NCBI RefSeq assembly: GCF_006345805.1
Contig: NW_021835393.1
Span: forward strand, 1-47,279
DNA: 47,279 bases
DNA from: Octopus sinensis
Lineage: Eukaryota
Direction of reading: 5' to 3'
A program made the position numbers and the translations under genes. Numbering within the stretch: the first letter of the stretch is position 1; the number at the start of each line of letters is the position of its first letter. The notes below the pieces were generated by a model. The model did not search any database, was not told where the DNA came from, and saw nothing but the letters and a program-made list of their open reading frames with translations. Positions 1 to 46,214 of this stretch are shown here, piece after piece.

Positions 1-79
1 TGTAGAATGAATGAAATAAAACGATTTTCTGTTCAATCTGCGTTCAGCTCCATTTCTTCAATTCACCAATAATGTTTTA

Positions 80-335
80 TATATATTATATATATATATA
101 TAGTATATACATATAATACATATATACACCCATCTACATAATGCTCATATACACACATACATGCACATACGTATAACTTACATACTACTACATACATATA
201 TATAATATATATATATATACCCATCTACACATCTGTACATACACACACATACATGCACATACACATAACTGTACATACCTACATATACATCGACATACTA
301 GCATACACTTGTATATATATATATACAATATATAT

Positions 336-371
<36 letters not shown>

Positions 372-488
372 AATATATATATATATATATACACACACAA
401 CAAAAACACCCAACATATATACATACATACATATAACACATATACAATATATATATATGTACAAACATATTACATATATATACATACA

Positions 489-519
<31 letters not shown>

Positions 520-1125: not shown

Positions 1126-1863
1126 TCAATCTGGTTGGCCGGGTAGGTCTATAGTTCTTGTAGTTGCATAAGTCTTATGCATGCAATTTGGGGAGTGTTC
1201 TGAGATCTTGTTAAGGAGAGGGCCTTTGGCGAACAAGATCTCTAGGCTCTCCGAAATGCAAAGGTCACAGCAGGTATGACCTCCTGTGTACGAACGCGCC
1301 TTCTGTAGTAGTTTCCACTTGGTCTTGAAGGGGATGGAGTTCCTTTTAAGGTACCAGATGTGGGCGGCGAGGGTGGTTTGGTTGGATTTATCCGGTCGCC
1401 GGAACGAGTGTGTGTGGGCGTACCAGCGGGTCTTAAAGCTGTTTGACGTCATTCCGATGTAGGATTTTCTTTTATCATCAGGGCCTGATCTTACCTCGCA
1501 TGTATATACGAGGTCCCTCTGTAGGCAGTTGTTGTTGAGGGGGCAAGTGGTTTTATCAGGGCAGTTGCAATTGCTATCGGATGTTGGATGGGCCTCGGAA
1601 AAAGTAGATATATTAAGTTTTTTCACATTGTAGTTAGCTAGGTTCCTGGCTAGATTGGGCGTGGTAGAGTAGGAGAGTCTAATGGTGTTCTTATTTAGGA
1701 TAGTGTAGTACTTATGTTGGGTGGGGAAGTGTTTCTGTAGGAGAGTGAAGAAGATTTTAGCTACAGGTGTAGCGACCTCACGGTTGAAGGGGAGGATCAC
1801 ATCTTGCTCGGCCTCGGTGATGGTGGTGGACCTCCTAGCGAAGTTAATCGCGTCGATCAGCAA
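1126..1863 (-). pseudogene. PLE1 reading frame: RT fragment fused in frame to GIY-YIG endonuclease
   Basis: CNCPDKTTCPLNNNC zinc motif, LVYTCEV...YIGMTSNSFKTRW GIY-YIG core, CDLC...CMH tail; RT motifs MGS/YRDD missing. Confidence 0.88.
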
Positions 1864-2992: not shown

Positions 2993-2995
2993 ACT

Positions 2996-3510
2996 CAAAA
3001 TAAGCAACAAGAATGACTCTGTCTTCAACATGAATCCTTTATGGACTTCTGAAACCCCCTTTACACCATTTCTACAATTAGAAAATCTTTATTGCTTCCT
3101 TCAATTTACTCCTCCCTCTCACAACCTTACAGCAGTCTGGAACAACCAAATCTTAGTTTGTCAGTTGATGGACTCCACTACCTCATATGTTCTTAACATT
3201 CAAATCCACATCTTTGTCTATATATCTACCCTCTCTATAATGTTACCACTTGATTTGAATATTTTTGTATTAATGGAAAACCTCTATAATTGGCTGATGA
3301 GTACTCAGCATCTTAAATCTGCTGTAATACTTACAACATTTAATAAAATGATGTAGTACGAAACGATCGTACCAAATTACCGGAGTCATTCTTGTTGCTT
3401 ATTTTGATTATAATCACCCCACGGATTTTTATGGATAACCCCAAACAAAATTCTGGTGCATCTAAATTAAGTACCATATTAATTTGAATCTAAATTTTTG
3501 CTGAACTTTA
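2996..3510 (+). mobile_element. Penelope-type terminal (pLTR-like) fragment carrying an HHR
   Basis: Contains HHR 3287-3379; 2996-3018 is an inverted copy of 3383-3405; downstream cattcttgttgctt motif is shared with the PLE2 termini. Confidence 0.65.
3287..3379 (+). ncRNA. Type I hammerhead ribozyme
   Basis: Helix I taattgg/ccaa(a)tta; CUGAUGA 3294-3300; helix II gtact/agtac; GAAA 3360-3363; palindromic helix III ACGATCGT; GUA cleavage after 3371. Confidence 0.85.
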
Positions 3511-3537
3511 TATTATATATATATATATATATATATA

Positions 3538-15900: not shown

Positions 15901-16478
15901 CAGGAGTGGCTGTGTGGTAAGTAGCTTGCTTACCAACCACATGGTTCCGGGTTCAGTCCCACTGCGTGGCTCCTTGGGCAAGTGTCTTCTACTATAGCCT
16001 CAGGCCGACCAAAGCCTTGTGAGTGGATTTGGTAGACGGAAACTGAAAAGAAGCCCGTCATATATATGTATATATAGGTGCAGGAGTATATATAGGTGCA
16101 GGAGTGGCTGTGTGGTAAGTAGCTTCCTTACCAACCACATGGTTCCGGGTTCAGTCCCACTGCGTAACACCTTGGGCAAGTGTCTTCTACTATAGCCTCA
16201 GGCCGACCAAAGCCTTGTGAGTGGATTTGGTAGACGGAAACTGAAAGAAGCCCGTCGTATGTATGTATATATATTTGTTTGCTTGTGTTTGTCCCAAAAT
16301 CGCTTGACAACTGATGCTGGTGTATTTACGTCCCTGTAACTTAGCGGTTCGGCAAAAGAGACCGATAGAATAAGTACTGGGCTTACAAAGAATAAGTCCC
16401 GAGATCGAGTTGCTCGATTAAAGGCGGTGCTCCAGCATGGCCGCAGTCAAATGTCTGAAACAAGTAAAAGAGTAAAGA
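15901..16478 (+). mobile_element. Two tandem SINE family A copies (head half 15901-16075; full 16095-16478)
   Basis: Family A sequence. Confidence 0.9.
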
Positions 16479-20555: not shown

Positions 20556-20900
20556 CATACACATATACGACAGGCTTCTTTCAGTTTCCATCTACCAAAT
20601 CCACTCACAAAGCTTGGTCGGCCCGAGGCTATAGTAGAAGACACTTGCCCAAGGTGCCACGCAGTGGGACTGAATCCGGAACCATGTGGTTGGTAAACAA
20701 GCAACTTACCACACACCCACTACTGCGCCTATATACGACGGGCTTTTTTCAGTTTCCATCTACCAAATCCACTCACAAGGCTTTGGTCGGCCCGAGGCTA
20801 TAGTAGAAGACACTTGCCCAAGGTGCCACGCAGTGGGACTGAACCCGGAACCATGTGGTTGGTAAACAAGCTACTTACCACACAGCCACTCCTACGCCTA
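20318..20900 (-). mobile_element. SINE family A with a tandem extra head (20731-20900)
   Basis: Family A sequence. Confidence 0.9.
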
Positions 20901-21149
20901 TTGGTTCCCAAAAGTTTAGGATTGTCTGGAAGTTTCGATGGCACCTTTGATTTGTATGTAGGATGTCTTGAGGATTACGTCCAGATTTTCAATTATGGGT
21001 TGAATTCCCGATTGTTGTTTGAAAGTTATTTTGGGGTGCAAGAGAGGTCAGGTCAGTGGAGTTGTGTACCCTAGACGGTCTGTGGTTTGTGTTAGATAAG
21101 CATTGGGTCATTTCTGTGTATGTTTTTGGTTTATTTTTCCTCAGGAAGG

Positions 21150-22015
21150 GGTTGGCGAAAGCGTCGTGGTGGACAACGAATAACCTGGGTGATGACAGTC
21201 AAGGCTGATCTGGAACCCAACCTACGAAGCAATTGCCCCAGCTCCCCTTCAGGGTTGTCGAAAGCGTCGTGGTGGACAACGAAAAATCTGGCTGATGACA
21301 GTCAAGGCTGATCTGGAACCCAACCTACGAAGCAATTGCCCCAGATTCCCTTCAGGGTTGGCGAAAGTGATGTGGTGGACAACGAAAAACCTGGCTGATG
21401 ACAGTCAAGGCTGATCTGGAACCCAACCTACGAAGCAATTGCCGCAGATCCCCTTCAGGGTTGGCGAAAGTGATGTGGTGGACAACGAAAAACCTGGCTG
21501 ATGACAGTCAAGGCTGATCTGGAACTCAACCTACGAAGCAATTGCCGCAGATCCCCTTCACGGTTGGCGAAAGTGATGTGGTGGACAACGAAAAACCTGG
21601 CTGATGACAGTCAAGGCTGATCTGGAACCCAACCTACGAAGCAATTGCCCCAGATCCCCTTCAGGGTTGGCGAAAGTGATGTGGTGGACAACGAAAAACC
21701 TGGTTGATGACAGTCAAGGCTGATCTGGAACTCAACCTACGAAGCAATTGCCCCAGATCCCCTTCAGGGTTGGCGAAAGTGATGTGGTGGACAACGAAAA
21801 ACCTGGCTGATGACGGTGAAGGCTGATCTGGAACCCAACCTAAGCCCCCATATCTACGGCTTTCGCCGCTGGAATAAGGAGTGGTTGGAGACAACGCGGT
21901 CGTTAGCCTCAAATCGCCAGGCCTGGTTGGCGTTTGTGAGAAATGCAGCATTGAGGATAAATGAAACCAGCCCAACCCACCCCGGGTGAATACTGTAAGA
22001 AGAAGAAAGAAGAAG
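21150..22015 (+). mobile_element. RTE-like LINE 3' end with a 103-bp segment amplified ~6.7 times
   Basis: Units at 21150, 21253, 21356, 21459, 21562, 21665, 21768; GWRKRRGGQRKTW...NRQAWLAFV motifs; (AAG)n tail. Confidence 0.8.
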
Positions 22016-32835: not shown

Positions 32836-35570
32836 ATGATTTTGATTTTGATTTTGATTTTTCCAGTTTCAGCTTATGAGCTGTGGCCATGCTGGGGCAC
32901 CGTCATTTGGTGTTGCTACTTGGTTTCACTTCATGAAGGCCTTCTAGCAACTGCTATTTGGTGCATGAGAGAGTTCGATGCAGCTGCCCTCATCTGCCCC
33001 TCCTGCCGTGAAGTTGGTTCATCTGGGACACCTGACAGGAAGAGATCCAGCTTCATTTTAAAGACATCTGTATCCACCCCATGCAGGTATCTCAGGTTCT
33101 TCGGGAGGATATTGAAGAGCTGTGGGCCTCGGAAGCCCAGGCTATCACAGAATCTTGTCCTACATCTTGATGGCAAGTTTGGAGTCCTAGGCACCACGCA
33201 GTGGCGCCCAGTTCTGGCTTTTGCGTAACTCTCGATGCCAAAGTTCAGGACACTTCCCTCCAGGATCTTCCAGATGTATATTATGGCATATCTTTCCCGC
33301 CTACGCTCCAGGGAATATAATTTTAATTTCTTGAGTCTTTCCCAGTAGCTTACATTCTGCATAGAGGCTATCTTCTTCGTGTAGCTACGTTGGATCGCCT
33401 CGAGCTCTGTGATCAACTTGACACTGGATGGTGACCATAACTGAGAGCAGTAGTCAAAGTGGCTTAGGACAAGTGTCCTCCAGAGGACCATCATGGTTTC
33501 TTGTTCTCTTGTTCTAATGGTTCTGAGGATCCATCCGGCCAGTCGTCTACATGTCATTGCCAATTTAGCAACATGTACACGAAAGGTCGCGTCATCACTC
33601 ATGTAAATACCCAGGTCACGCACTGATTGTGCCTCTGGGATTGCTATTCCTCCGGGTCCAGTGTATTCATTGGGTATTGCATTTAGTTTTGCATGCTGAT
33701 AGTATAGAGCTTGAAACTTTTCAGCATTGAACTGCATGCTATTCTTTTCGGCCCACTTGTATATTTTGTCTAGCTCACATTGCAGGTGTTTAGTGTCCTC
33801 AGGGTTCTGTATTGCCTGTGAAACTTTTGTATCATCTGCATAACTTGTGATCGTGGCTCTCTGCGTGGCTGAGGGCATGTCTGAGAGGGCCATTATGAAC
33901 AGTAGTGGTCTCAGAACAGTGCCCTGCGGAACACCGCTCACTATTTGCGTGTTAATGGAAGTGGCCCCATTGGCCACTACCACCTGACTTCTATCTTTCA
34001 GAAAGTCATGAAGCCATTCTCCCAGTTTTCCAACTATGTTGAGATCACGCAGTTTGTGACATATCATTCCATGATCGACTTTATCAAAGGCCTTTGCAAA
34101 GTCGAGATATATCACTTCCACATTTGAGTGGTTGAGCAGCCGCTTCAGCACCCAGTCATAGTGTTGTAGGAGCTGAGTTAAACAGGTTCTCCCTGGTCGG
34201 AAACCATGTTGGGTGTCGGGCAGCAAGTCATTTTCTTCAAGGAAGGTGATCAGCTTCCTTCTGACTATTCGTTCCATGACGTTGCTGATGTGTGAGGTCA
34301 GAGAGATAGGTCTATAGTTCTTGGCTTCCGCTCTGCTACCTCCTTTATGAATGGGGCATATTTTACCTTCCTTCAGTTTTCTTGGAAGTTTGCCAGCTGC
34401 AAGGAAGCTCTGAAAGAGGAACTGCAGTGGTCTTGCTAGGACTCTCTTACATGCTTTTAGGAGGATTGCCGGGAATCCATCGGGGCCAGTAGCTGAGTCT
34501 GTTTTCATTTCATCTATAGCCTTGATTACATCGTCTTCCTTTATATCGATGTAATCTATCGTCGCCGCCTCTGATTTTATATCTGCAGTGGTAAAAAAGT
34601 CAGTTGGATTGGTGATTTGGAGATGCCCAAGGGGTGGAGTGAAAACACTCTTGAATTGCTCATTCAGTATTTCACTTACCCTCATTGGTTTTCCTGTAAG
34701 TGTGCCATCCTTTTCGAGGAGTGGCCCTATTCTACAGTGCACCGTAGCTGTTTCTTTGGCATACCTGTAGAAAGCTCTGGGGTTAGATTTTATGTTGTCT
34801 ATAGCCCAGGCTTCTTTGTCTGCTCTTTCCTTTTCATGGGAGAGTTTCAGACATTTTTCGATGTCCAACAGTTTTATTTTTAGGCGGGACTTTTCACTGC
34901 TTTCAATCTGTTTGTTTAGGCGATTTGAAAATTTTGTACGCCGTCTCATTAGAATTTTCCTCTCTCTGGGGATTTTGTTCTTGTGTACAGTAGCCTTTCT
35001 CTCTGGGACATATTTGTAGCATATGGCTTGCATTACAGACATGAATTGTTGAAGTTTCACGTCGATGTCTGGCGAGGAGAGACATTTAGGCCAGTTTTGT
35101 TTGAGGATCTCTTTCCCAATTTGTTTCCAGTTTGCCTTATGGTAGTTCAAGCTGGAAAGATTCTGGGGGTTTCTTGTAGGCTGCATGTCCGTGCTCTCTT
35201 TTGGCCCGTACATGGTCAGCTCTATCATGTTGTGATCCGAGAGTAGTGTCGGTGTCACTTTCACATTATGGATGAGATCCATGTCATTTGTGAAGCAGAG
35301 ATCCAGTGTGTTACCTGCCCTGGTTGGTTGGAGTATTACCTGCTCCATGTACAGGGTGTTGATGAGGTTCAGGAGGGACCTCGCCTGTCCTCGTTCACAT
35401 CTTGTCATTCCTGGGAGAGAAAGGCCCTCGGGCCATCTGACATTTGGCAGATTGAAGTCTCCCATAAGAAGTACACTTATGTGTTGTTCTAATGTGGTTA
35501 GAACTTCTTCTATTTTTATAAGGCAGTCTTCAAACTTGCCCACATGGCTTGGGGCATCTGGAGGGCGATA
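32836..35570 (-). mobile_element. CR1-clade LINE, 5'-truncated, with uninterrupted ORF2 (stop at 32931)
   Basis: APE motifs YRPP, GDFN, TLDL, SDH; RT motifs NYRPISLTS, QHGFR, YLDFAKAFD, GVPQG, YADD; (AAAATC)n tail. Confidence 0.95.
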
Positions 35571-35759
35571 TATATATACATACATACATATATACATACA
35601 TACATACATATACACATACATACATATATATATACATACATACATATATATACATACATACATATATATACATACATACATACGTACATATATATATACA
35701 TACATACATACTTATATATACATACATACATATATATATATATACATACATACATATAT

Positions 35760-35792
<33 letters not shown>

Positions 35793-36762
35793 TACATACA
35801 TACATACATATATACATGCATACATACATACATACATACATACATACGTACATACATACATACATACATACATGGTGGCTGCCCCCTCGTTATCGAGTAT
35901 GGCCATTGCACGAAGCTTAATCATTGTTGTTATCGTGCAATACCTGTGCAAGAAGATTTTTTTTAAAGTGAGGAAAGGCTGTGCACTGAGTCAATCCCAC
36001 TCACTAAGCAACAGCACCCATAATCCGAAATGAAGAAAAAGTCAACATCATCGGTAACCACTGAGCCGCAGGTTTTATGTCGGAGCTATCCCAGTTACCT
36101 GAGTTACCGCTTCCTTGAAGGATGCCCTAACAAAGGCTAGGAGTCCTTCACTCCCAATGGTTTAACCGCGCGATCGGGTATTGAGTCCGATTATTTCTAT
36201 GTCCCCGCGCATGATATAGCCTTAAGACATTTATCGGATGGCCGTTGACTCTCAAGAGTTCCTCCGCCCTTTGACGGGTTTTGTTTTTTTATCCCGCTGG
36301 GTGTCCAATAAACACCCTCCTCACCAAGCAAACTTGGTGGGGTTGCCGGTTTAGTTGCCGATGACCCGACCATGCAACAGGCTGTAGTGGATTCCATGTT
36401 ACCAGTAGCCATGTTACAAGTCACCTGACATACATCCATACATACATGCATACGTAAGTACATAAATACATACAAACATACATATATACATACTTACGTA
36501 CATATATATATATATATACGTACATACATACATACATATATACATATATACATACATACATACATACATACGTATATACATACATACATACATATATACA
36601 TATATACATACATACATACATACACAACCATACATACAAACATACATATACATACATTGATACAAACATACATATATACATACATATATACATACATACA
36701 TATACATACATACATATATATACATACAAATAGGAAAAAAGCAACAAGAATGGATCAATATA

Positions 36763-36847
36763 TCGGTACAATTTTTTCGTACGAGGACAACTTTAATAGA
36801 GCTACAAAAATTGCAGTAAATATAGATGGCTCATACTCATCAGCCGA
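36763..36847 (-). ncRNA. Type I HHR of PLE2 left arm (helix III C15.2 mutated to A)
   Basis: ucgg-CUGAUGA-guaugag...cucguac-GAAAaaauuGUA|ccga. Confidence 0.7.
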
Positions 36848-37537
36848 AAAAACATCCGAGATTCCCTAACATCTAAGGGGGTAATGTTACACTCGTGAAA
36901 CATCATGGAAAGTTCTATAAAAATGAGAATTTAGATAACATATTGGTTTCTAAGAGTTCAATTAGTATTACACAGTCATATATCAGGTTATTAAAAAGTT
37001 TTTTCAATACATCTTAGTTTTCCAGAAAGTGAATATAAAAGTGAAGGTGTGAGTTTATCCGTATTGAAAAAAGTTTGATTCCTGGAGATCCGATGAGAGG
37101 TATCGAACTCACAGAATATGTGTTTGTCCATATATAGTTCATAGTAAATTGTTAATCAAGCTATGTGAAGAAATTTTGGATATAATCGTGCGAAATTTCT
37201 GAAAACTGCTGCATTATAATCCGAGGGATAAGCGTAGCGACAGCCTTATAGTGGAGACGAACAGGCTGCTATCAAAATCTACAAGAATCACAGAGCTAAA
37301 GGAAGAAAGTTGAATTTAACCAACTACTGCTATTAATTGCTATATAAAGAGGAAATGGGAAGATGAAAGGGAGGGTCAAAAGTTGTTACTATAAGAAAAC
37401 ATCTTAGCGTATTTGGTGCAAAATTCAAACGGAGGTCATTTAACTTATTTCTATATTTATTAATGTTACTATTAATAGATTGTCAGGTTATGGGGATATA
37501 ATAAGAGGTCAGAAGAAAAGAAAAGAAAATGGAGTTA

Positions 37538-38826
37538 GGAGGGGCGTTCAATAAGTAATGCCCCTGACCCACTTCCCATAGCAGTAGGCAACGAAACTTG
37601 GCACAGTTATTAGTCTTTTTCTACATAGGAACCACCCAGAGTTACGCATTTCTCCCATCGTTTCATGCGGCTCTGGAGACCGTTTTTGTAGAAGAACCCA
37701 GCTTGGTCCTCCAACCTCAACGTGACTTCCGAAATCAAGGCTGCATCATCTGGGAAACGCTTTCCTTTCAAAAACATCTTCATGATTGGGAAGAGGTGAA
37801 AATCAGAGGGTGCAAGGTCAGGAAAGTAGGGGGATGGGGATGAGTTCATAGCCATACGCCTGTGCTTCTGATCTGGCGACAAGCGAGTTGTGGACCGGAG
37901 CGTTGTCCTGCAGGAGGAGGATGCCTTTGCTGATCTTGCCCCGCCTCTTGATTTTGATAACTTCTCTTAATTTCCTCAAAAGTGAAGCATAATAGGCTCC
38001 TGCAATTGTGGTACCCTTTGCCAGGAAATCTGTCATCACTACTCCGTTCTGGTCCCAGAAGACTGTGAGCATGACCTTGCCAGCGGAGGGCTGCACCCTT
38101 GCCTTCTTTGGAGGGGGTGAGTCACGGTGCTTCCACTGCATTGACTGGGCTTTGGTCTCTGGATCAACGTGATGGACTCAGGTTTAATCCTGTGTAATCA
38201 GTCTTTTGAAAAATTTTGACTCATCTTCTTGGCACATCTCCAAATTCACCCTCGAGCACTCGACGCGTTCTTGCTTCTGGAAAGGCGTGAGCAACCTGGG
38301 AATCCATCTGGCAGACACCTTTTGCATATGCAAATGGTCATGAATGATAGTTTCCACAGACCCGGTACTAATCTTGACCTCATGGGCTATTTGGCGAATA
38401 ATTATGCGTCGATCTTCCAAAATGGCAGCCTCAACTTGACGAACAGATGCCTCATCAATGGCAGAAGGGGGCGACCAGATCTGGGAGCTGTTTCCACAGA
38501 GTTCCGACCATGTTTGAATTCACTATGCCAGCGTTTTACAAGGTCATATGATGGGGTATCATCACCATAAGTTACTTTCATTTCATCAAAAGTCTCCCGT
38601 GGTGTGCGTCCTTTCAAATACAAAAACCGGATCACTGCTCGACACTTAACAGGCTCCATTTCACACTTGACTCGGTTCAAACACCTGTAAATCAGAAACC
38701 ACAATTAGTTCAGAGCTGTAATTTGCCACTTACTCTATAGAGATGAAAATGATTGCACATGCAAAATTTCAGCTAGATCAAACAACTGCAAGTGGGTCAG
38801 AGGCATTACTTATTGAACGTCCCTCG
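37538..38826 (-). mobile_element. Full-length (1289 bp) mariner transposon, frameshifted transposase
   Basis: ~37-bp TIRs; TA TSD at 37536-37537 and 38827-38828; WIPRLL, ITQD, QDNA, YFPDLAPSDFHLF motifs; empty site at ~42350-42370. Confidence 0.97.
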
Positions 38827-39244
38827 TATTTTCTAATGAAACCGTACTATTATATTATATTATATTATATTGTATTATATTATAGGTTTGGGATTAGCAG
38901 AATTAGTTATTAGTGTAAAAGACCTAAGAAGTTTAACTAACTAATTTCCTAGAAGTAGGTTAAATTAAAATTAGTGTAAAAGACCTAAGAAGTTTAACTA
39001 ACTAATTTCCTATAAGTAGGTTTACTTAAAATAGACTAAGTATTAGAGAGAAATAATTTTATATTATCTACATAGTCTAATAGAATGAAGAATTAAATCA
39101 AATAACTTAAATCAATAAGTATCACCTAGTACAGTTAGAGAGAGAATATAATCATAGCTAATTAGATCGTAGCTGTCTAATTAAATATATAATAAAATAT
39201 GTAGGAGTAAAGTTTTATTCAAAGGGATTTTATATAAAGTGATT

Positions 39245-41335
39245 TTAATATATACTGTTATCAATTAAAACATCATTTAAAATATTTAAGAGTCTTAGTC
39301 CGAGCGTGGATACAAGATTTCCCAGTTCAATCCTGCTGTTCAATAAAATATCATTACTTTTTCTATACATTAGTATTTCAAATGTTTCCATAGAGCAAAG
39401 TTGACAACCTACTCTGTTATTTTTATAGGGTATCGCTCTTCTAACTAATTCCCAATTAAGGTTATATTTGATATTATTGTTTTTTAGTTCCCAAATTTTA
39501 CTAGAAAGAGTGGTGCCATCAGCTTTATGACGTAATCTGAAGGAGGATAGATGATTGCTAATTCTTTTTCTAAAATTTACGGTACATCCTAAATAAGTGA
39601 ATTTGTTATTATCTGTGGTTATGGAGCATTTGTAGATTATATTATTTAACCCGCATAAACCAGGCGCCGGGCATTTTGATTTAATCCTACAGTTACATCT
39701 AGGGGAATTATAATTTGATGTGGAATAATTCGAGGATAGAAGTCTCATATTACTGTTACTCGAGACAGTACGAGTATATTTTTCATAATTTTGGTTACTG
39801 CTGTTATCTAAAATAATGTTATCAGTATTGTAGTTAATGTTATTATCTAAAGTAGTATTATCATTTATCGGTATTCCTACACTATCATTTGGTTCTATAA
39901 CCCTACTTTCATTATTAATATTGTTGATGCTGTTAGTTTTGTTGTCGGTATTGGTTTCTAAATATGTAGTGTTATTGCAGATAACATTGTTGTCTTCATT
40001 TACTGTACTTACATTCTTGGTATTATTCGTATTATTAATATAATTATTCCTATTTGTGTTATTATTATTATTAGCAATTCTATAGCTATTGGTTATACTT
40101 ATTATATGACATTCATTATTACCATTGTTGCTATTATTACTTTCAGTAATGTTATTACAGTTTTCATTTGTATTTTTATTGCTATTGTTTAAATTTTTCC
40201 TGGCTAGTTTTATGTTATTATTATTGATCTTGGCTATTAAAGTGGACATATTTGGGAGGGTTGAATAAGAAATTCTGACTGTTTTTTTAGAAATAATTTT
40301 ATGATATCTATGAGAAGATGGGAAATTCTTTTCTATAATTGTTTTGAATTTACTCTGAATATCTGATAAAACCGCACAGTTAAAAGGGATGTTTAACCAT
40401 ATTATGTCTTTCTTATTAAATTTCTTAGAATTAGAGTTGGGGTTGTTTGAATTGTTCTTTCTATCATCAGATTCTTTGTATTTATTATTTGCATGTTTCT
40501 TAGTGTTATCAAAGTTTATTTTAACCGTATTACATGTGTTCAGTACTATGTTCTTATTGTTATTCTTAATTTCATTAGGATATTTTGCCGTTGTAAATCT
40601 ACTTCTACTATTATTTCTGGCTTGATCCTTATTGTTGTCTACGTTACTAATTGTATGCTTCTTAATTTTATCTAAAATTGTCTTATCAGGGCTATCCATG
40701 TTATGGTCTATGCAGTTATCCTTGTTCTTATTACCATTTCGATTAGATGTTGTATTAAATCTACCTCTACGTATCTTTTCGGCTTGATCGTTTTTGTTGT
40801 TTACGTGGTTATTGTTATTTAAATTATTTAACTTATTATGAGTTTGTAAGTTTTCTATATCAATAAATGTAATTTTTTGGTTATATCCTGCTCTAAATAA
40901 CGCCTCATTATAATGCTCTGAGTGTGAGTTAAATATGTCAAAATTAGACGATAATTTGGATATTCTTATGGAAATATTTCTAACTAAGGAATTAATTATA
41001 TTTGGGGGATGATTAGATAATTTACTTACGTAACTAGTGATTTCACCTTCTTTTCTAAATGGGTAATGTAGTTTAGAGTTAAGGTCTAATGTAATATCTA
41101 GAAAATTGGCTATTTTAATGCCTGGCTCATAGGTTATGCTAAGGTTGAAATCTTTAAAGAACCTATTAATTTTCTTTTTGATTCTTTCTATGTGTGATTT
41201 ATTATTACTATGGACAACAAACAAAGTATCATCTCTATATAAACCACCTTGCAATTCAGGGATCTCATTTCTTATGCATTTTAGTAGATATGCTCCGACT
41301 AAGTTGGTCACCTCAGCAGAAACACTTGAGCCCAT
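39245..41335 (-). CDS. PLE2 RT/GIY-YIG reading frame (N-truncated; broken upstream RT to ~41685)
   Basis: MGS..AE..LVG, YRDD, FLDITL, CNCR..CP..GLC, IIY..YLGCT; two long Asn-rich linkers. Confidence 0.85.
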   Translation of the reverse strand: MGSSVSAEVTNLVGAYLLKCIRNEIPELQGGLYRDDTLFVVHSNNKSHIERIKKKINRFFKDFNLSITYEPGIKIANFLDITLDLNSKLHYPFRKEGEITSYVSKLSNHPPNIINSLVRNISIRISKLSSNFDIFNSHSEHYNEALFRAGYNQKITFIDIENLQTHNKLNNLNNNNHVNNKNDQAEKIRRGRFNTTSNRNGNKNKDNCIDHNMDSPDKTILDKIKKHTISNVDNNKDQARNNSRSRFTTAKYPNEIKNNNKNIVLNTCNTVKINFDNTKKHANNKYKESDDRKNNSNNPNSNSKKFNKKDIIWLNIPFNCAVLSDIQSKFKTIIEKNFPSSHRYHKIISKKTVRISYSTLPNMSTLIAKINNNNIKLARKNLNNSNKNTNENCNNITESNNSNNGNNECHIISITNSYRIANNNNNTNRNNYINNTNNTKNVSTVNEDNNVICNNTTYLETNTDNKTNSINNINNESRVIEPNDSVGIPINDNTTLDNNINYNTDNIILDNSSNQNYEKYTRTVSSNSNMRLLSSNYSTSNYNSPRCNCRIKSKCPAPGLCGLNNIIYKCSITTDNNKFTYLGCTVNFRKRISNHLSSFRLRHKADGTTLSSKIWELKNNNIKYNLNWELVRRAIPYKNNRVGCQLCSMETFEILMYRKSNDILLNSRIELGNLVSTLGLRLLNILNDVLIDNSIY

Positions 41336-43045
41336 AGAATATCGAAATTATTAGGGGTATCCGCTCTGGTCCATAATTTTCCCTCAAACTCAATAAATGT
41401 TTTTCTAGCTAAAAGTACAATGTATATTTCCTCTCTAGATATGAGGGAGCGATTCATCGCGAATATAAGCGATTTATTTAATAGAATAGGGGAAATGCTA
41501 GAGCAGTAGTTGTTTATGTCAAATTGAATGAAGACTAGATTATTGGTATTAGTTAGGGAGTTAAACCATTAAGTACCTCATCGGTATTTATCCATAGGCT
41601 TAAGGGAAGAAGTGGGGTTATCTGGGGTAAAACATTATCGAGGATAAATTTACTAGATTTACTATATTTACCATAAATTTTCGGCAAAGAATTAGCAATC
41701 ATCTATCCTCCTTCAGATTACGTCATAAAGCTGATAGCATCACTCTTTCTAGTAAAATTTGGGAACTAAAAAACAATAATATCAAATATAACCTTAATTG
41801 GGAATTAGTTAGAAGAGCGATACCCTATAAAAATAACAGAGTAGGTTGTCAACTTTGCTCCATGGAAACATTTGAAATACTAATGTATAGAAAAAATAAT
41901 GATATTTTATTGAACAGCAGGATTGAACTGGGAAATCTTGTATCCACGCTCGGACTAAGACTCTTAAATATTTTAAATGATGTTTTAATTGATAACAGTA
42001 TATATTAAAATCACTTTATATAAAATCCCTTTGAATAAAACTTTACTCCTACATATTTTATTATATATTTAATTAGACAGCTACGATCTAATTAGCTATG
42101 ATTATATTCTCTCTCTAACTGTACTAGGTGATACTTATTGATTTAAGTTATTTGATTTAATTCTTCATTCTATTAGACTATGTAGATAATTTAAATTATT
42201 TCTCTCTAATTCTTAGTCTATTTTAATTTAACCTACTTATAGGAAATTAGTTAGTTAAACTTCTTAGGTCTTTTACACTAATAACTCATTCTGATAATCC
42301 CAAACCTATAATATAATATAATATAATATAATATAATAGTACGGTTTCATTAGAAAATAACTCCATTTTCTTTTCTTTTCTTCTGACCTCTTATTATATC
42401 CCCATAACCTGACAATCTATTAATAGTAACATTAATAAATATAGAAATAAATTAAATGACCTCCGTTTGAATTTTGCACCAAATACGCTAAGATGTTTTC
42501 TTATAGTAACAACTTTTGACCCTCCCTTTCATCTTCCCATTTCCTCTTTATATAGCAATTAATAGCAGTAGTTGGTTAAATTCAACTTTCTTCCTTTAGC
42601 TCTGTGATTCTTGTAGATTTTGATAGCAGCCTGTTCGTCTCCACTATAAGTCTGTCGCTACGCTTATCCCTCGGATTATAATGCAGCAGTTTTCAGAAAT
42701 TTCGCACGATTATATCCAAAATTTCTTCACATAGCTTGATTAACAATTACTATGAACTATATATGGACAACACATATTCTGTGAGTTCGATACCTCACAT
42801 CGGATCTCCAGGAATCAAACTTTTTTCAATACGGATAAACTCACACCTTCACTTTTATATTCACTTTCTGGAAAACTAAGATGTATTGAAAAAACTTTTT
42901 AATAACCTGATATATGACTGTGTAATACTAATTGAACTCTTAGAAACCAATATGTTATCTAAATTCTCATTTTTATAGAACTTTCCATGATGTTTCACGA
43001 GTGTAACATTACCCCCTTAGATGTTAGAGAATCTCGGATGTTTTT

Positions 43046-43130
43046 TCGGCTGATGAGTATGAGCCACCTATATTTACTGCAATTTTTGTAGCTTTATTAA
43101 AGATGTCCTCGTACGAAACAATTGTACCGA
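43046..43130 (+). ncRNA. Type I HHR of PLE2 right arm
   Basis: Helix I ucgg/ccga; CUGAUGA 43050-43056; helix II guaugag/cucguac closing a ~44-nt insert; palindromic ACAAUUGU; GUA cleavage after 43126. Confidence 0.85.
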
Positions 43131-43184
43131 TATATTGATACATTCATGTTGCTTTTTTCCTATGTATATATATATACACGCATA

Positions 43185-43915
43185 TATACACACACACGTG
43201 TACACGTCCACACACGCACATCCTCATTAAAATGACACATCTGCCACGTCATGATAAAATCACAAATGAAAAGCCTCATTAATTTAAGAAAAGTAACAAG
43301 TTCGAACTAGAAATATTTTCGTGAAGTCTTTATAACGCTGAGGCATAATCATTTTGAAAGAATAAATGGGAAATATTAATTAATAATATCCGGCTGCTGA
43401 TTGCGATAATCATCCTTGAGTCTATTCAATATGTAGTCAACCGTGATTTATTTGTTGAAAGTATATTTTCATTCTTTTTCCTCTTAAGTAGACATCTTTC
43501 CCGTTGATTATAATCTAGTTATGTTCTTAGTATCGATTAGTATCCAGAAGTGATAAGATACTCACAATCAGGGAAAATGATTATTGTTTTATTGAATTTT
43601 AAAATATAATCCCAACGTTTATAATTTTTTTCATCAGTGAATGTGAGTGGCTTAGGGGACAGGATTTGCACTCACGATTCGATGAACATGCGATCGATTC
43701 CTGGACGGGATGGCGTGTGTGATCCTTGAGCAAAGTTCCGCATTTCACGTTGCCCCAGGGCTGTGAGGGGACTGGCATATCAATGAATAGACCCAACGTT
43801 TCGTCTGCGTTTCGTAAAAACAACTAATTTAGGTTCTCGCCTAAATTGTACAAAGGGGTCGTCCGCCAAGGAATCCCTTAGAAATGGGAGATAAAGCGAC
43901 GCACTGTAACACAGC
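43185..43915. repeat. Old inverted duplication, arm 2
   Basis: See 29925-31215. Confidence 0.75.
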
Positions 43916-44046
43916 ATGCTTCCATGTATGTATGAATGTGTGTATGTATGTGTATGTATATATGTATGTATGTGTGTTTATATGTATGTGTGTGAATGTA
44001 TTCATGTATGTATGAATGTGTGTATATATTATATATATATACGTAA

Positions 44047-44129
<83 letters not shown>

Positions 44130-44401
44130 TATATTATATATATATATATATAAATATGAATTAGTTTAGGGTAGAAATTGATATTTATCAGTTAGAACCA
44201 GTGGTCTAGCATATTAAAAAAAGAATCCGAAGATTAAAATATTTATATATACCATTAAAGACTGAACACGAAAAGTGGACAGTCAACATGCTAGATATAG
44301 AGGTCAAATCGCCATTCTCCACAAAAGATTATGTTCTCAGATCAAACTCAACACAAAACCATAGCAATAAACAAGTGAAAATATACGAAATAAATATTTA
44401 C

Positions 44402-44465
44402 CCATGTACTAATTAGTTTCGGCTGTTATTTTCCGCAAGGAAAAGTGCAGCCATCATCAGCATGG
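44402..44465 (-). ncRNA. Type I HHR, array unit on minus arm
   Basis: ccaug-CUGAUGA-u-ggcug...cagcc-GAAACUAAUUAGUA|caugg. Confidence 0.88.
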
Positions 44466-44799
44466 TCCGATATAAAATGCAATTTGCTGGACTAGATGCA
44501 AACACGATACCGAAATATTGCGTGCATGGAGTACAGCCTATTACATTTGAATATATATTTCAAATGCCTTTACTTTTGGCGCGATGAGACCCGAGAAAAC
44601 TAGCCTGCAGCTAATAATTAACAGCAGTTAATTTATCGGTTAGAGAACATCTATTTATATAAAATTAATTTAGGGTAGAAATTGATATTTATCAATTAGA
44701 ACCAGTATATATATTCAAATGTAATAGGCTGTACTCCATGCACGCGATATTTCGGTATCGTGTTTGCATCTAGTCCAGCAAATTGCATTTTATATCGGA

Positions 44800-44863
44800 C
44801 CATGCTGATGATGGCTGCACTTTTCCTTGCGGAAAATAACAGCCGAAACTAATTAGTACATGG
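44800..44863 (+). ncRNA. Type I HHR, array unit 1
   Basis: As above; cleavage after 44858. Confidence 0.9.
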
Positions 44864-45303
44864 GTAAATATTTATTTCGTATATTTTCACTTGTTTATTG
44901 CTATGGTTTTGTGTTGAGTTTGATCTGAGAACATAATCTTTTGTGGAGAATGGCGATTTGACGTCTATATCTAGCATGTTGGCTGTCCACTTTTCGTGTT
45001 CAGTCCTTAATTGGTATATATAAATATTTTATCTTCGGATTCTTTTTTTAATATGCTAGACCACTGGTTCTAATTGATAAATATCAATTTCTACCCTAAA
45101 TTAATTTTATATAAATAGATGTTCTCTAACCGATAAATTAACTGCTGCTAATTATTAGCTGCAGGCTAGTTTTCTCGGGTCTCATCGCGCCAAAAGTAAA
45201 GGCATTTGAAATATATATTCAAATGTAATAGGCTGTACTCCATGCACGCGATATTTCGGTATCGTGTTTGCATCTAGTCCAGCAAGTTGCATTTTATATC
45301 GGA

Positions 45304-45367
45304 CCATGCTGATGATGGCTGCACTTTTCCTTGCGGAAAATAACAGCCGAAACTAATTAGTACATGG
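45304..45367 (+). ncRNA. Type I HHR, array unit 2
   Basis: As above; cleavage after 45362. Confidence 0.9.
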
Positions 45368-45807
45368 GTAAATATTTATTTCGTATATTTTCACTTGTTT
45401 ATTGCTATGGTTTTGTGTTGAGTTTGATCTGAGAACATAATCTTTTGTGGAGAATGGCGATTTGACGTCTATATCTAGCATGTTGGCTGTCCACTTTTCG
45501 TGTTCAGTCCTTAATTGGTATATATAAATATTTTAATCTTCGGATTCTTTTTTTAATATGCTAGACCACTGGTTCTAATTGATAAATATCAATTTCTACC
45601 CTAAATTAATTTTATATAAATAGATGTTCTCTAACCGATAAATTAACTGCTGCTAATTATTAGCTGCAGGCTAGTTTTCTCGGGTCTCATCGCGCCAAAA
45701 GTAAAGGCATTTGAAATATATATTCAAATGTAATAGGCTGTACTCCATGCACGCGATATTTCGGTATCGTGTTGCATCTAGTCCAGCAAGTTGCATTTAT
45801 AATCGGA

Positions 45808-45870
45808 CCATGCTGATGATGGCTCACTTTTCCTTGCGGAAAATAACAGCCGAAACTAATTAGTACATGG
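45808..45870 (+). ncRNA. Type I HHR, array unit 3 (one G missing in helix II)
   Basis: As above; cleavage after 45865. Confidence 0.85.
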
Positions 45871-46050
45871 GTAAATATTTATTTCGTATATTTTCACTTG
45901 TTTATTGCTATGGTTTTGTGTTGAGTTTGATCTGAGAACATAATCTTTTGTGGAGAATGGCGATTTGACCTCTATATCTAGCATGTTGACTGTCCACTTT
46001 TCGTGTTCAGTCCTTAATTGGTATATAGAAATATGTATATATATATACAT

Positions 46051-46119
<69 letters not shown>

Positions 46120-46120
46120 A

Positions 46121-46151
<31 letters not shown>

Positions 46152-46214
46152 AATATATATATATTTATATTATATATATATATATATATATATAAATATA
46201 TATATGTATATATA

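What the first reader, a model, noticed from the sequence alone, without database searches (positions are those of the whole stretch)
44165..46027. Candidate cephalopod retrozyme: 504-bp tandem units each with an intact dimer-type hammerhead, predicted to release ~504-nt monomer or circular RNA
Seen: four HHRs with complete cores, helix I ccaug/caugg, helix II ggcug/cagcc enclosing a second hairpin (uuuucc/ggaaaa), an extra U after A9, and a perfect 10-nt palindrome ACUAAUUAGU as helix III. Plus-strand cleavage sites at 44858, 45362 and 45865 delimit 504- and 503-nt monomers with no ORF. Established: HHR-bearing tandem repeats (newt satellite 2, cricket and schistosome satellites, non-LTR retrozymes) are transcribed, self-cleave, often via dimers, and can circularise; reported metazoan monomers are usually shorter. 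Inference: a non-autonomous element copied from multimeric or circular RNA by Penelope RT, which fits the tandem structure, head-to-head inversion and (AT)n target. I know of no description of this family but cannot search.
Basis: partly seen in the sequence, partly recalled or inferred. Interest (0 to 1): 0.92.

Follow-up and report, generated by a model that had tools for sequence, protein, structure and literature searches.

The report
Octopus hammerhead-ribozyme tandem repeat element
A short non-coding repeat in an Octopus sinensis contig carries a Penelope-type self-cleaving hammerhead motif in each 504-bp unit and looks like a parasite of Penelope-like retrotransposons, so it is a real and well-read feature but a new example of a known kind of element.

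Summary
Window 44144/44159-46027 is a roughly 1.9-kb insertion inside a (TA)n microsatellite. It has a minus-oriented arm of 1.09 units joined head-to-head to a plus-oriented arm of 2.6 units of a 504/503-bp non-coding repeat.

A descriptor scan finds 6 HHRs in the window and 0 in 200 dinucleotide shuffles. The "odd" features are the published signature of Penelope-like-element (PLE) minimal HHRs: an extra U between A9 and G10.1, a G10.1-C11.1 pair, a 5-bp helix I, a long helix II and a palindromic helix III. Folding predicts an inactive monomer and a double hammerhead as the lowest-energy (MFE) fold of the natural two-HHR transcript.

The window is the Octopus sinensis contig VCDQ01005361.1. 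A 5'-truncated head-to-head PLE with the same topology lies 1 kb away, but it is unrelated in sequence.

Best reading: a non-autonomous, PLE-mobilised element of the non-LTR retrozyme type.

Not shown: transcription, cleavage, RNA circles and other genomic copies. No cephalopod genome could be searched by DNA. Rfam models do not recognise the motif.

Monomers of about 500 bp and a PLE origin for retrozymes are already published. This is a new member of a known kind, of moderate interest.

The parts
44023..44157 (.). Left (TA)n microsatellite flank, taken to be the target. It is preceded by (ATGT)n at 43924-44022.
   Evidence: TRF. Sequence.
44144..44706 (-). Inverted, 5'-truncated arm of 1.09 units. 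Read on the minus strand it runs from unit position 205 to 504, then from 1 to about 250-262. Its 3' end fades into the left (TA)n at a UA-rich stretch of the unit.
   Evidence: the repeat finder I1 and I5. blastn. Alignment.
44402..44465 (-). HHR copy in the inverted arm. It is identical to plus copies 1 and 2. A17 is at 44407.
44706..44707 (.). Head-to-head (5'-5') junction. Unit position 205 of the minus arm abuts unit position 353 of the plus arm. The junction is asymmetric, so this is not a perfect palindrome.
44707..46027 (+). Plus-oriented arm of 2.6 units. It runs from unit position 353 to 504, through two full units, then from 1 to about 165-180. Its 3' end fades into the right (TA)n at a UA-rich stretch of the unit.
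44800..44863 (+). HHR copy 1. Predicted cleavage after A at 44858.
44859..45362 (+). Full monomer 1, cleavage site to cleavage site. 504 nt, 34% GC, no ORF. MFE -135.5 kcal/mol, z = -4.56.
45304..45367 (+). HHR copy 2. Predicted cleavage after A at 45362.
45363..45865 (+). Full monomer 2. 503 nt, 98.8% identical to monomer 1.
45808..45870 (+). HHR copy 3. The core is intact. A 1-nt deletion shortens helix II to 4 bp. Predicted cleavage after A at 45865.
46022..46214 (.). Right (TA)n microsatellite flank. It ends at the boundary of another repeat, which has a paralogue at 9551-9381.
36706..43187 (.). Context only, not part of the element. This is a head-to-head pair of 5'-truncated copies of a Neptune-like PLE. 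The minus copy is about 41665 down to 36706 and carries the RT-C-terminus/GIY-YIG ORF 39245-41335. The plus copy is 41666-43187. Its own HHRs lie at 36843 (-, degenerate) and 43050 (+). It has the same topology as the 504-bp array and no sequence similarity to it.

Best explanation
This is one insertion of a non-coding, non-autonomous retroelement of the non-LTR retrozyme type, meaning a PLE-dependent element whose whole unit is a 504-nt HHR-bearing sequence.

Shown here:
- The unit, its four PLE-type minimal hammerheads and the predicted cleavage sites.
- The tandem plus head-to-head architecture, with both 3' ends pointing outward into a (TA)n tract.

Inferred, integration:
- A multimeric transcript of a source array was reverse-transcribed at a (TA)n site nicked by the GIY-YIG endonuclease of an autonomous PLE.
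- Both nicked strands primed cDNA synthesis (twin-priming type) on UA-rich stretches of the RNA, near unit positions 165-180 and 250-262.
- This gave a direct arm from the 3' part of the RNA (353..504 | 1..504 | 1..503 | 1..~165).
- It also gave an inverted arm from the adjacent upstream part (205..504 | 1..~250). About 100 nt (positions 251-352) were lost at the 5'-5' junction.

Inferred, RNA processing:
- In transcripts with two or more units, neighbouring HHRs pair through the 10-nt palindrome ACUAAUUAGU into a double hammerhead.
- A lone HHR is predicted to sit in an inactive fold, which would protect monomers and circles.

The autonomous partner is not the neighbouring PLE family. That family's HHR lacks the extra nucleotide, and no sequence is shared with the unit.
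For: - Motif and chance: 6 descriptor hits against 0 in 200 shuffles.
- Identical HHR in 3 of 4 copies, and exact cleavage-site spacing of 504 and 503 nt.
- HHRs with the same CUGAUGA-U-GGCUG..CAGCC-GAAAC arrangement recur in metagenomes.
- Dimer dependence. The active monomer fold is -16.5 kcal/mol, against an inactive MFE of -20.0 (P about 0.001). Cofolding gives the double hammerhead at -45/-46, against 2 x -20. The unconstrained MFE of the natural 578-nt stretch 44795-45372 contains the 10-bp inter-HHR helix III plus the trans helix I.
- Non-coding: no ORF over 64 aa. No homologue of any unit-encoded peptide was found among 5.8 billion proteins.
- Self-paired RNA: z = -4.56, and 65% of bases paired when folded as a circle.
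- PLE-style integration. Tandem/inverted insertions and a (TA)n preference are reported for PLEs with the EN linker. The adjacent PLE shows the same topology, 5'-5' head-to-head with 3' ends outward.
- A second short HHR element lies between (TA)n tracts at 2994-3510.
- The variant pattern is consistent with one template read as X-X-Y-Y-X.
- Published frame: non-LTR retrozymes and their PLE origin.
Against: - Only one locus is known. No other copy turned up in the rest of the window, in about 63 kb of three other Octopus loci, or in the metagenome, viral and prokaryote collections.
- No cephalopod genome or transcriptome could be searched by DNA. Multi-copy status, free arrays and expression are therefore untested.
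- Rfam's hammerhead models give no hit, even at E<=10 on 111 nt. The neighbouring PLE's HHR scores a weak 12.4 bits.
- PLE minimal HHRs cleave poorly in vitro, even as dimers.
- With copies about 99% identical, there is no covariation evidence for the fold.
- If the template was an uncleaved RNA of four or more units, the HHRs were not cutting efficiently in that molecule.
Confidence: 0.68

Rival explanations
1. The array is the 5'-truncated 3' end of an autonomous PLE whose 3' UTR or pLTR itself contains four or more tandem 504-bp HHR repeats. Both cDNA arms stopped before reaching the ORF. On this reading there is no independent non-autonomous family.
For: - Most PLE insertions are 5'-truncated, and HHRs sit in PLE terminal repeats.
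- Both arms here are truncated, with their 3' ends outward.
- The neighbouring PLE also has internal tandem repeats, of 61 bp, in its 3' region.
Against: - It needs a source element carrying more than 2.1 kb of 504-bp repeats at its 3' end.
- The two arms end at different unit positions (about 165-180 and about 250-262), not at one defined element 3' terminus.
- Nothing in the unit resembles a PLE ORF or the neighbouring PLE.
Confidence: 0.15
2. This is a local DNA-level minisatellite. A single solo PLE terminal fragment of about one unit was inserted. It was then duplicated and inverted by unequal crossing-over or replication errors, with no multimeric or circular RNA involved.
For: - The 2026 preprint proposes exactly this kind of local amplification of PLE termini.
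- The two middle units share three variants, as expected if one mutated unit was duplicated.
Against: - The inverted arm is not a mirror image of the direct arm (position 205 abuts position 353).
- Both outer ends terminate in (TA)n at UA-rich microhomologies, as expected for priming on RNA.
- The same 5'-5' topology occurs in the neighbouring PLE.
Confidence: 0.1
3. This is an assembly artefact on an unplaced long-read contig: a palindromic chimera or a mis-collapsed repeat.
For: - The window is a 47-kb unplaced contig made almost wholly of repeats.
- It holds large inverted repeats.
Against: - The junction is asymmetric.
- The arms differ at private sites, about 1%.
- The architecture is the one expected for PLEs, and it is seen twice in the contig.
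Confidence: 0.03
4. The hammerhead motif is a catalytically dead relic or passenger. The element moves, or moved, as an ordinary non-autonomous PLE parasite, and no monomeric or circular RNA is made.
For: - There is no Rfam hit.
- PLE minimal HHRs show low in vitro activity.
- HHR-less Naiads proliferate well, and the HHRs may simply parasitise PLEs.
- The inferred template kept four or more uncleaved sites.
Against: - All core positions are intact in all four copies.
- The full set of PLE-HHR accessory features is present.
- The double hammerhead is the MFE of the natural tandem transcript.
Confidence: 0.2

Closest known systems
Metazoan non-LTR retrozymes (Acropora, Mytilus, axolotl; Cervera & de la Pena 2020, PMC7229834; Li et al. 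2026 preprint, 10.64898/2026.07.22.740005)
   Same: - Non-coding, low-GC tandem units, each with a type I HHR on one strand only.
- Highly self-paired monomer RNA.
- Co-occurrence with PLEs, which are the proposed mobilisers.
- HHRs that work as dimers, as in amphibians.
   Different: - At 504 nt the monomer is above the 170-400 nt range of the 2020 paper, though inside the 51-972 bp range of the 2026 preprint.
- The HHR is the PLE minimal type, with an extra nucleotide at 9/10.1 and no loop-loop contacts. It is not the canonical type reported for most invertebrate retrozymes.
- Only 3.7 units at one locus were seen.
- Expression and circles are untested.
- The host is a cephalopod, which is not described in the papers that could be searched.
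Minimal HHRs in the pLTRs of Penelope-like elements (Cervera & de la Pena 2014, PMC4209133; Craig et al. 2021, PMC8557442)
   Same: - The HHR anatomy matches feature by feature.
- The insertion is a tandem plus an inverted 5'-truncated copy.
- The target is (TA)n.
   Different: - There is no RT/GIY-YIG ORF between or next to the repeats.
- The repeating unit is only 504 bp.
- The unit is unrelated in sequence to the PLEs in the window.
pDo500 satellite of Dolichopoda cave crickets and newt satellite 2
   Same: - The repeat is about 500 bp (pDo500) and carries a hammerhead.
- Multimeric transcripts are processed to monomers.
- A double-hammerhead mechanism has been proposed.
   Different: - Those are large satellites making up several percent of the genome.
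- This is a short array with clear retro-insertion hallmarks.
Plant LTR retrozymes
   Same: HHR-delimited non-coding RNA that is circularised and copied by a borrowed RT.
   Different: Plant retrozymes have type III HHRs, LTRs, a PBS and PPT, 4-bp TSDs, high GC and Gypsy mobilisers. None of these is present here.

Membership tests
Hammerhead ribozyme, type I (PLE-type minimal variant) | Conserved core C3 U4 G5 A6 N7 G8 A9 ... G12 A13 A14, an A15.1-U16.1 pair, and H17 that is not G | tested here: met
   All four copies read CUGAUGA ... GAAA ... U A|.
Hammerhead ribozyme, type I (PLE-type minimal variant) | Three helices around the core, with helix I open (type I topology) | tested here: met
   Helix I is 5 bp (CCAUG/CAUGG). 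Helix II is 5 bp plus a nested 6-bp hairpin. Helix III is 3 bp in the monomer and 10 bp in the dimer.
Hammerhead ribozyme, type I (PLE-type minimal variant) | [quoted passage not shown] | tested here: met
   The sequence matches the description in PMC4209133.
Hammerhead ribozyme, type I (PLE-type minimal variant) | Recognition by the curated covariance model (Rfam RF00163 or clan CL00010) | tested here: not met
   There was no hit at the gathering score, nor at E<=10 on 2 kb or on 111 nt. The control PLE HHR at 43044-43132 scored only 12.4 bits against a gathering score of 34. The model is therefore insensitive to this subclass.
Hammerhead ribozyme, type I (PLE-type minimal variant) | Site-specific self-cleavage | not testable with these tools
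   This needs in vitro transcription of monomer and dimer constructs.
Non-LTR retrozyme | Tandem repeats (a dimer or more), each unit carrying a type I HHR in one polarity | tested here: met
   There are 2.6 direct units plus 1.09 inverted units, with an HHR in each. The opposite polarity has none.
Non-LTR retrozyme | No coding capacity, low GC, and no LTR/PBS/PPT | tested here: met
   ORFs are 64 aa or shorter, with no protein homologues. GC is 34%. No tRNA-like or Rfam feature was found.
Non-LTR retrozyme | Highly self-paired monomer RNA | tested here: met
   MFE is -135.5 kcal/mol with z = -4.56, and 65% of bases pair when the RNA is folded as a circle.
Non-LTR retrozyme | Dispersed multi-copy family with arrays of variable copy number | not testable with these tools
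   No searchable cephalopod genome was available. The unit is absent from the rest of the window and from three other Octopus loci.
Non-LTR retrozyme | Expressed as linear and circular monomer RNAs | not testable with these tools
   No transcriptome access.
Autonomous Penelope-like element | A single ORF with RT and GIY-YIG endonuclease inside the repeated unit | tested here: not met
   There is no ORF and no RT or EN remnant in the 504-bp unit.
Autonomous Penelope-like element | Insertion architecture: a partial tandem, an upstream inverted 5'-truncated copy, and a microsatellite (TA)n target | tested here: met
   Observed. Described in PMC8557442.
HHR satellite DNA (newt satellite 2, pDo500) | Long homogeneous arrays that form a sizeable fraction of the genome | tested here: inconclusive
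   This locus has only 3.7 units. Genome-wide abundance is unknown.

The most novel reading that the evidence does not exclude
This would be the first cephalopod retrozyme family, and an invertebrate one in which the array carries the PLE minimal HHR itself together with a complete PLE integration scar. That would extend the "retrozymes are PLE derivatives" model, so far shown only in Xenopus, to invertebrates. The locus would also record retrotransposition from an uncleaved multimer of four or more units by twin priming. That would mean ribozyme cleavage and RNA circles are not needed for mobilisation.
Probability: 0.4. Interest if true: 0.45.

Novelty: new member of a known kind. Interest (0 to 1): 0.33.

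Why it matters
If confirmed, the locus gives a clean, young example (about 1% divergence) that links PLE-type minimal hammerheads, non-coding tandem units and the PLE integration scar in a mollusc outside the bivalves.

It bears on an open question: what hammerheads do for PLEs and retrozymes. The variant pattern and junction geometry suggest the template was a long uncleaved multimer, not a monomeric circle. That can be tested genome-wide.

It is also a practical warning in two ways. Rfam models miss this HHR subclass entirely. And NCBI annotated the neighbouring PLE ORF as a protein kinase.

Tried and rejected
- Rfam scans at the gathering score and at E<=10 found no hammerhead hit. This is explained by the model's insensitivity (control).
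- Exact look-up of unit-encoded ORFs in public assemblies found nothing on record.
- A composite query of all unit peptides of 24 aa or more against 5.8 billion proteins gave no hit. There is therefore no coding remnant, and no route to other copies.
- The specific HHR pattern gave 0 hits in metagenome, viral and prokaryote contigs.
- A relaxed core/helix II pattern gave 45 unrelated HHRs, probably of prokaryote, phage or insect origin. They are useful only as evidence that an extra U after A9 occurs naturally.
- blastn of the unit against the rest of the window and against three other Octopus PLE loci found no similarity. The unit is therefore not derived from the neighbouring PLE family.
- The first protein search with the whole PLE ORF was swamped by the ORF's N-rich low-complexity segments. 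Repeating it with those segments removed identified the organism.
- A search for an empty-site paralogue of the flanks failed. The left and right flanks belong to different repeats.
- Literature searches for cephalopod or octopus hammerheads and retrozymes found nothing specific. A search for a string from the SINE-like repeats at 15901-16273 and 20563-20901 also found nothing.
- The palindromic assembly-artefact reading was rejected because the junction is asymmetric.
- Rolling-circle copying of a single circle was considered less likely because of the three shared variant sites. It is not excluded.
Full report
**1. What is in the sequence**

The region 44144/44159-46027 is a compact block of one repeat family set between two (TA)n tracts, at 44023-44157 and 46022-46214.

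- The repeat finder gives direct repeats with start-to-start spacings of 504 and 503 nt. It also gives a 453-nt inverted repeat that is 99% complementary (44254-44706 against 45063-45515).
- I defined the unit from predicted cleavage site to cleavage site, 44859-45362, and ran blastn with it. The plus-oriented arm runs from unit position 353 to 504 (44707-44858). It continues through two full units (44859-45362, 504 nt; 45363-45865, 503 nt, 98.8% identical). It ends with positions 1 to about 165-180 (45866 to about 46027).
- The minus-oriented arm, read on the minus strand, runs from unit position 205 to 504 (44706 down to 44407). It then runs from 1 to about 250-262 (44406 down to about 44144).
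- The two 5' ends meet head-to-head at 44706/44707 (...GAACCAGT|ATATATATTC...). Both 3' ends point outward and fade into the microsatellite at UA-rich stretches of the unit (GGTATATATAAATAT and TTTTATATAAATAG).
- Nothing else in the 47-kb window resembles the unit.

**2. The hammerheads**

- All four copies read CCAUG-CUGAUGA-U-GGCUG-CAC-UUUUCC-UUGC-GGAAAA-UAA-CAGCC-GAAA-CUAAUUAGU-A|CAUGG. They lie at 44800-44863, 45304-45367 and 45808-45870 on the plus strand, and 44402-44465 on the minus strand.
- Copy 3 has lost one G of helix II.
- I wrote a structural descriptor and ran it on both strands. It requires the core, an optional extra nucleotide, a G10.1-C11.1-closed helix II of at least 4 bp, a helix III of at least 2 bp, H17 that is not G, and a helix I of at least 4 bp. 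It gives six hits in the window: these four plus 3294(+) and 43050(+). It gives none in any of 200 dinucleotide-preserving shuffles. The motif is therefore not a chance match.
- Rfam does not see it. There was no hit at gathering thresholds, nor at E<=10 on 2 kb or on 111 nt.
- As a control, the clear PLE hammerhead 1 kb upstream (43044-43132) reaches only 12.4 bits, E = 3.3, against a gathering score of 34. The curated model is close to blind for this subclass, so its silence weighs little.

**3. The "odd" features are a known signature**

Cervera & de la Pena (2014, PMC4209133) describe the minimal HHRs in PLE terminal repeats. These have:
- a larger helix II;
- a 4-5-bp helix I;
- a conserved G10.1-C11.1 pair;
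- palindromic 15.2-16.2 positions or loop 3, implying action as dimers.

Every item is present here. An extra residue at that position is also tolerated in the CChMVd (+) hammerhead, with a moderate loss of rate (PMC1636495). My relaxed metagenome scan turned up many complete HHRs with the same CUGAUGA-U-GGCUG...CAGCC-GAAAC arrangement.

**4. Predicted behaviour of the RNA**

- For the isolated 64-nt motif, the active fold costs -16.5 kcal/mol. The alternative fold, in which CUGAU pairs with AUUAG, costs -20.0. The ensemble probability of the active fold is about 0.001.
- Two copies cofold into a double hammerhead with a 10-bp helix III at -45 to -46 kcal/mol, against 2 x -20.
- More tellingly, I folded the natural 578-nt stretch spanning two adjacent HHRs (44795-45372) without constraints. 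Its MFE contains the inter-HHR 10-bp helix III, both helices II and a trans helix I.
- The 504-nt monomer is much more structured than shuffles (-135.5 kcal/mol, z = -4.56; the minus strand gives z = -3.83). It is 65% paired when folded as a circle.
- It is 34% GC.
- It has no ORF over 64 aa. No homologue of any encoded peptide was found in a 5.8-billion-protein search.
- These are predictions only. No cleavage, transcript or circle has been observed.

**5. Context**

- A cleaned query from the neighbouring ORF hit a 100% identical NCBI protein of Octopus sinensis on a contig of 47,279 bp. The look-up identifies the window as the whole unplaced contig VCDQ01005361.1 of GCA_006345805.1. The "cephalopod" label is therefore confirmed.
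- That ORF (39245-41335, minus strand) starts at RT motif C (YRDD). It runs through N-rich low-complexity sequence and ends in a Cys-rich linker plus GIY-YIG endonuclease (IIYKC...YLGCT...R...H). It is a PLE. NCBI has annotated it as a "probable serine/threonine-protein kinase".
- Together with an inverted, shorter copy at 41666-43187, it forms a head-to-head pair with both 3' ends outward. This is the same topology as the 504-bp array.
- Its hammerheads are at 36843(-), which is degenerate, and 43050(+). They have no extra nucleotide and a different palindrome (ACAAUUGU). It shares no sequence with the 504-bp unit.
- Craig et al. [quoted passage not shown] They also describe an inverted 5'-truncated copy next to the upstream pLTR, and preferential insertion into (TA)n for clades with the EN linker (Neptune, Naiad, Hydra).

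**6. Mechanism**

The anatomy fits target-primed reverse transcription at a nicked (TA)n site, with both DNA ends priming on one RNA (twin priming).
- The right-hand nick primed at a UA-rich stretch near unit position 165-180 and copied 2.6 units.
- The left-hand nick primed about 100 nt upstream of where the first cDNA stopped, near position 250-262, and copied 1.09 further units.
- Joining of the two 5' ends lost positions 251-352.

The unit alignment shows three sites that partition the pieces identically: about 105 G/C, about 124 G/A and about 434 G/A.
- The two middle units carry G, G and G.
- The outer plus pieces and the whole minus arm carry C, A and A.
- Read along the inferred template, this is X-X-Y-Y-X. 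It is what a transcript of a heterogeneous source array would give.
- Rolling-circle copying of a single circle would give identical units, so it needs post-insertion duplication or conversion of a mutated middle unit. That alternative is not excluded, because there are only three sites and overall divergence is about 1%.
- If the multimer model is right, the template kept four or more hammerhead sites uncut. This agrees with the weak activity reported for PLE minimal HHRs. It also agrees with the view that HHRs may not be needed for PLE proliferation.

**7. Comparison with what is known**

- Non-LTR retrozymes are non-coding, low-GC tandem repeats with type I HHRs. They are expressed as 170-400-nt linear and circular RNAs, and PLEs are proposed as their mobilisers (PMC7229834).
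- A 2026 preprint reports consensus lengths of 51-972 bp in vertebrates. It shows Xenopus retrozymes to be sister to PLE pLTRs, and notes that invertebrates were not examined.
- The pDo500 cricket satellite has repeats of roughly 500 bp with a hammerhead and a proposed double-hammerhead mode.
- So neither the 504-nt size, the dimer mode, the extra nucleotide nor the PLE link is new.
- What appears undescribed, within the searchable literature, is a cephalopod example. So is an invertebrate array that carries the PLE minimal HHR itself rather than a canonical one.

**8. What could not be done**

- No tool gave DNA-level access to a cephalopod genome or transcriptome.
- Routes through proteins, pattern scans of the public collections and three other Octopus loci yielded no second copy.
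- Whether this is a free multi-copy family therefore remains open. So does whether it is expressed and whether it is cleaved.
- The main rival is a truncated 3' repeat block of an autonomous PLE, and it cannot be excluded.

**9. Verdict**

- It is a new member of a known kind.
- Interest is moderate to low (0.33), not 0.92.

Noticed in passing
window 2994-3510: A second, unrelated short non-coding element lies between two (TA)n tracts (2857-2993 and 3509-3537). It carries a PLE-type minimal HHR at about 3290-3377 (uugg CUGAUGA GUAC..GUAC GAAAC GAUC GUA|CCAA). It also carries an exact 25-nt inverted repeat (2996-3020 and 3384-3408), the second arm lying just 3' of the HHR, that could close the RNA into a rod. 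It looks like a solo retrozyme-like monomer or a PLE 3' end.
   Followed up: partly
window 36706-43187 (ORF 39245-41335, minus strand): This is a head-to-head pair of 5'-truncated Neptune-like PLE copies. The ORF holds the RT C-terminus, N-rich low-complexity sequence and a GIY-YIG endonuclease. NCBI annotates it as 'probable serine/threonine-protein kinase DDB_G0283337 [Octopus sinensis]', which is a misannotation of a transposon ORF. The minus copy holds about 1.3 kb (37538-38852) that is absent from the plus copy.
   Followed up: partly
window 1126-1863 (minus strand): A further PLE remnant. This ORF encodes a GIY-YIG motif (..KSYIGMTSNSFKTRWYAHTHSF..). No matching HHR was found downstream of it.
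   Followed up: no
window 32931-35705 (minus strand): An intact 924-aa LINE ORF with endonuclease (Exo_endo_phos_2) and RVT_1 domains. It may be a recently active non-LTR element and is an alternative source of RT in this genome.
   Followed up: no
window 2807 (+), 27185 (+), 25356 (-): Three copies of the same repeat end (..CTGATGATTTCTYTTGAATGAAACAGTTCTAGTCYTGTAGAAGCTCCTTCTATA). The first two directly abut (TA)n, the third only a short TA-rich stretch. This may be another family that targets (TA)n. The CUGAUGA..GAAAC stretch in it does not fold as a hammerhead.
   Followed up: no
window 21149-21842; about 22100 (minus strand); about 30670: A 103-bp tandem repeat of 6.7 copies at 95% identity. 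Short interstitial telomere-like runs, (CCCTAA)3 and CCCTAACCCTAA, lie nearby. Their origin is unknown.
   Followed up: no
loci L005-L049 (metagenome contigs): The pattern CTGATGATGGCTG..CAGCCGAAAC hits 45 contigs from marine, gut and other metagenomes. Many are complete hammerheads with the same unpaired U after A9, for example L006: ccacc CUGAUGA U GGCUGGGG..CCCCAGCC GAAAC ucccuccgggga GUC ggugg. This core variant is widespread outside animals.
   Followed up: partly
window 15901-16273 and 20563-20901: Tandem duplicated SINE-like units with a tRNA-derived box (GGTTC.GGGTTCAGTCCCACTG), in opposite orientations. From memory this looks like the abundant octopus SINE. A literature string search found nothing.
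   Followed up: partly
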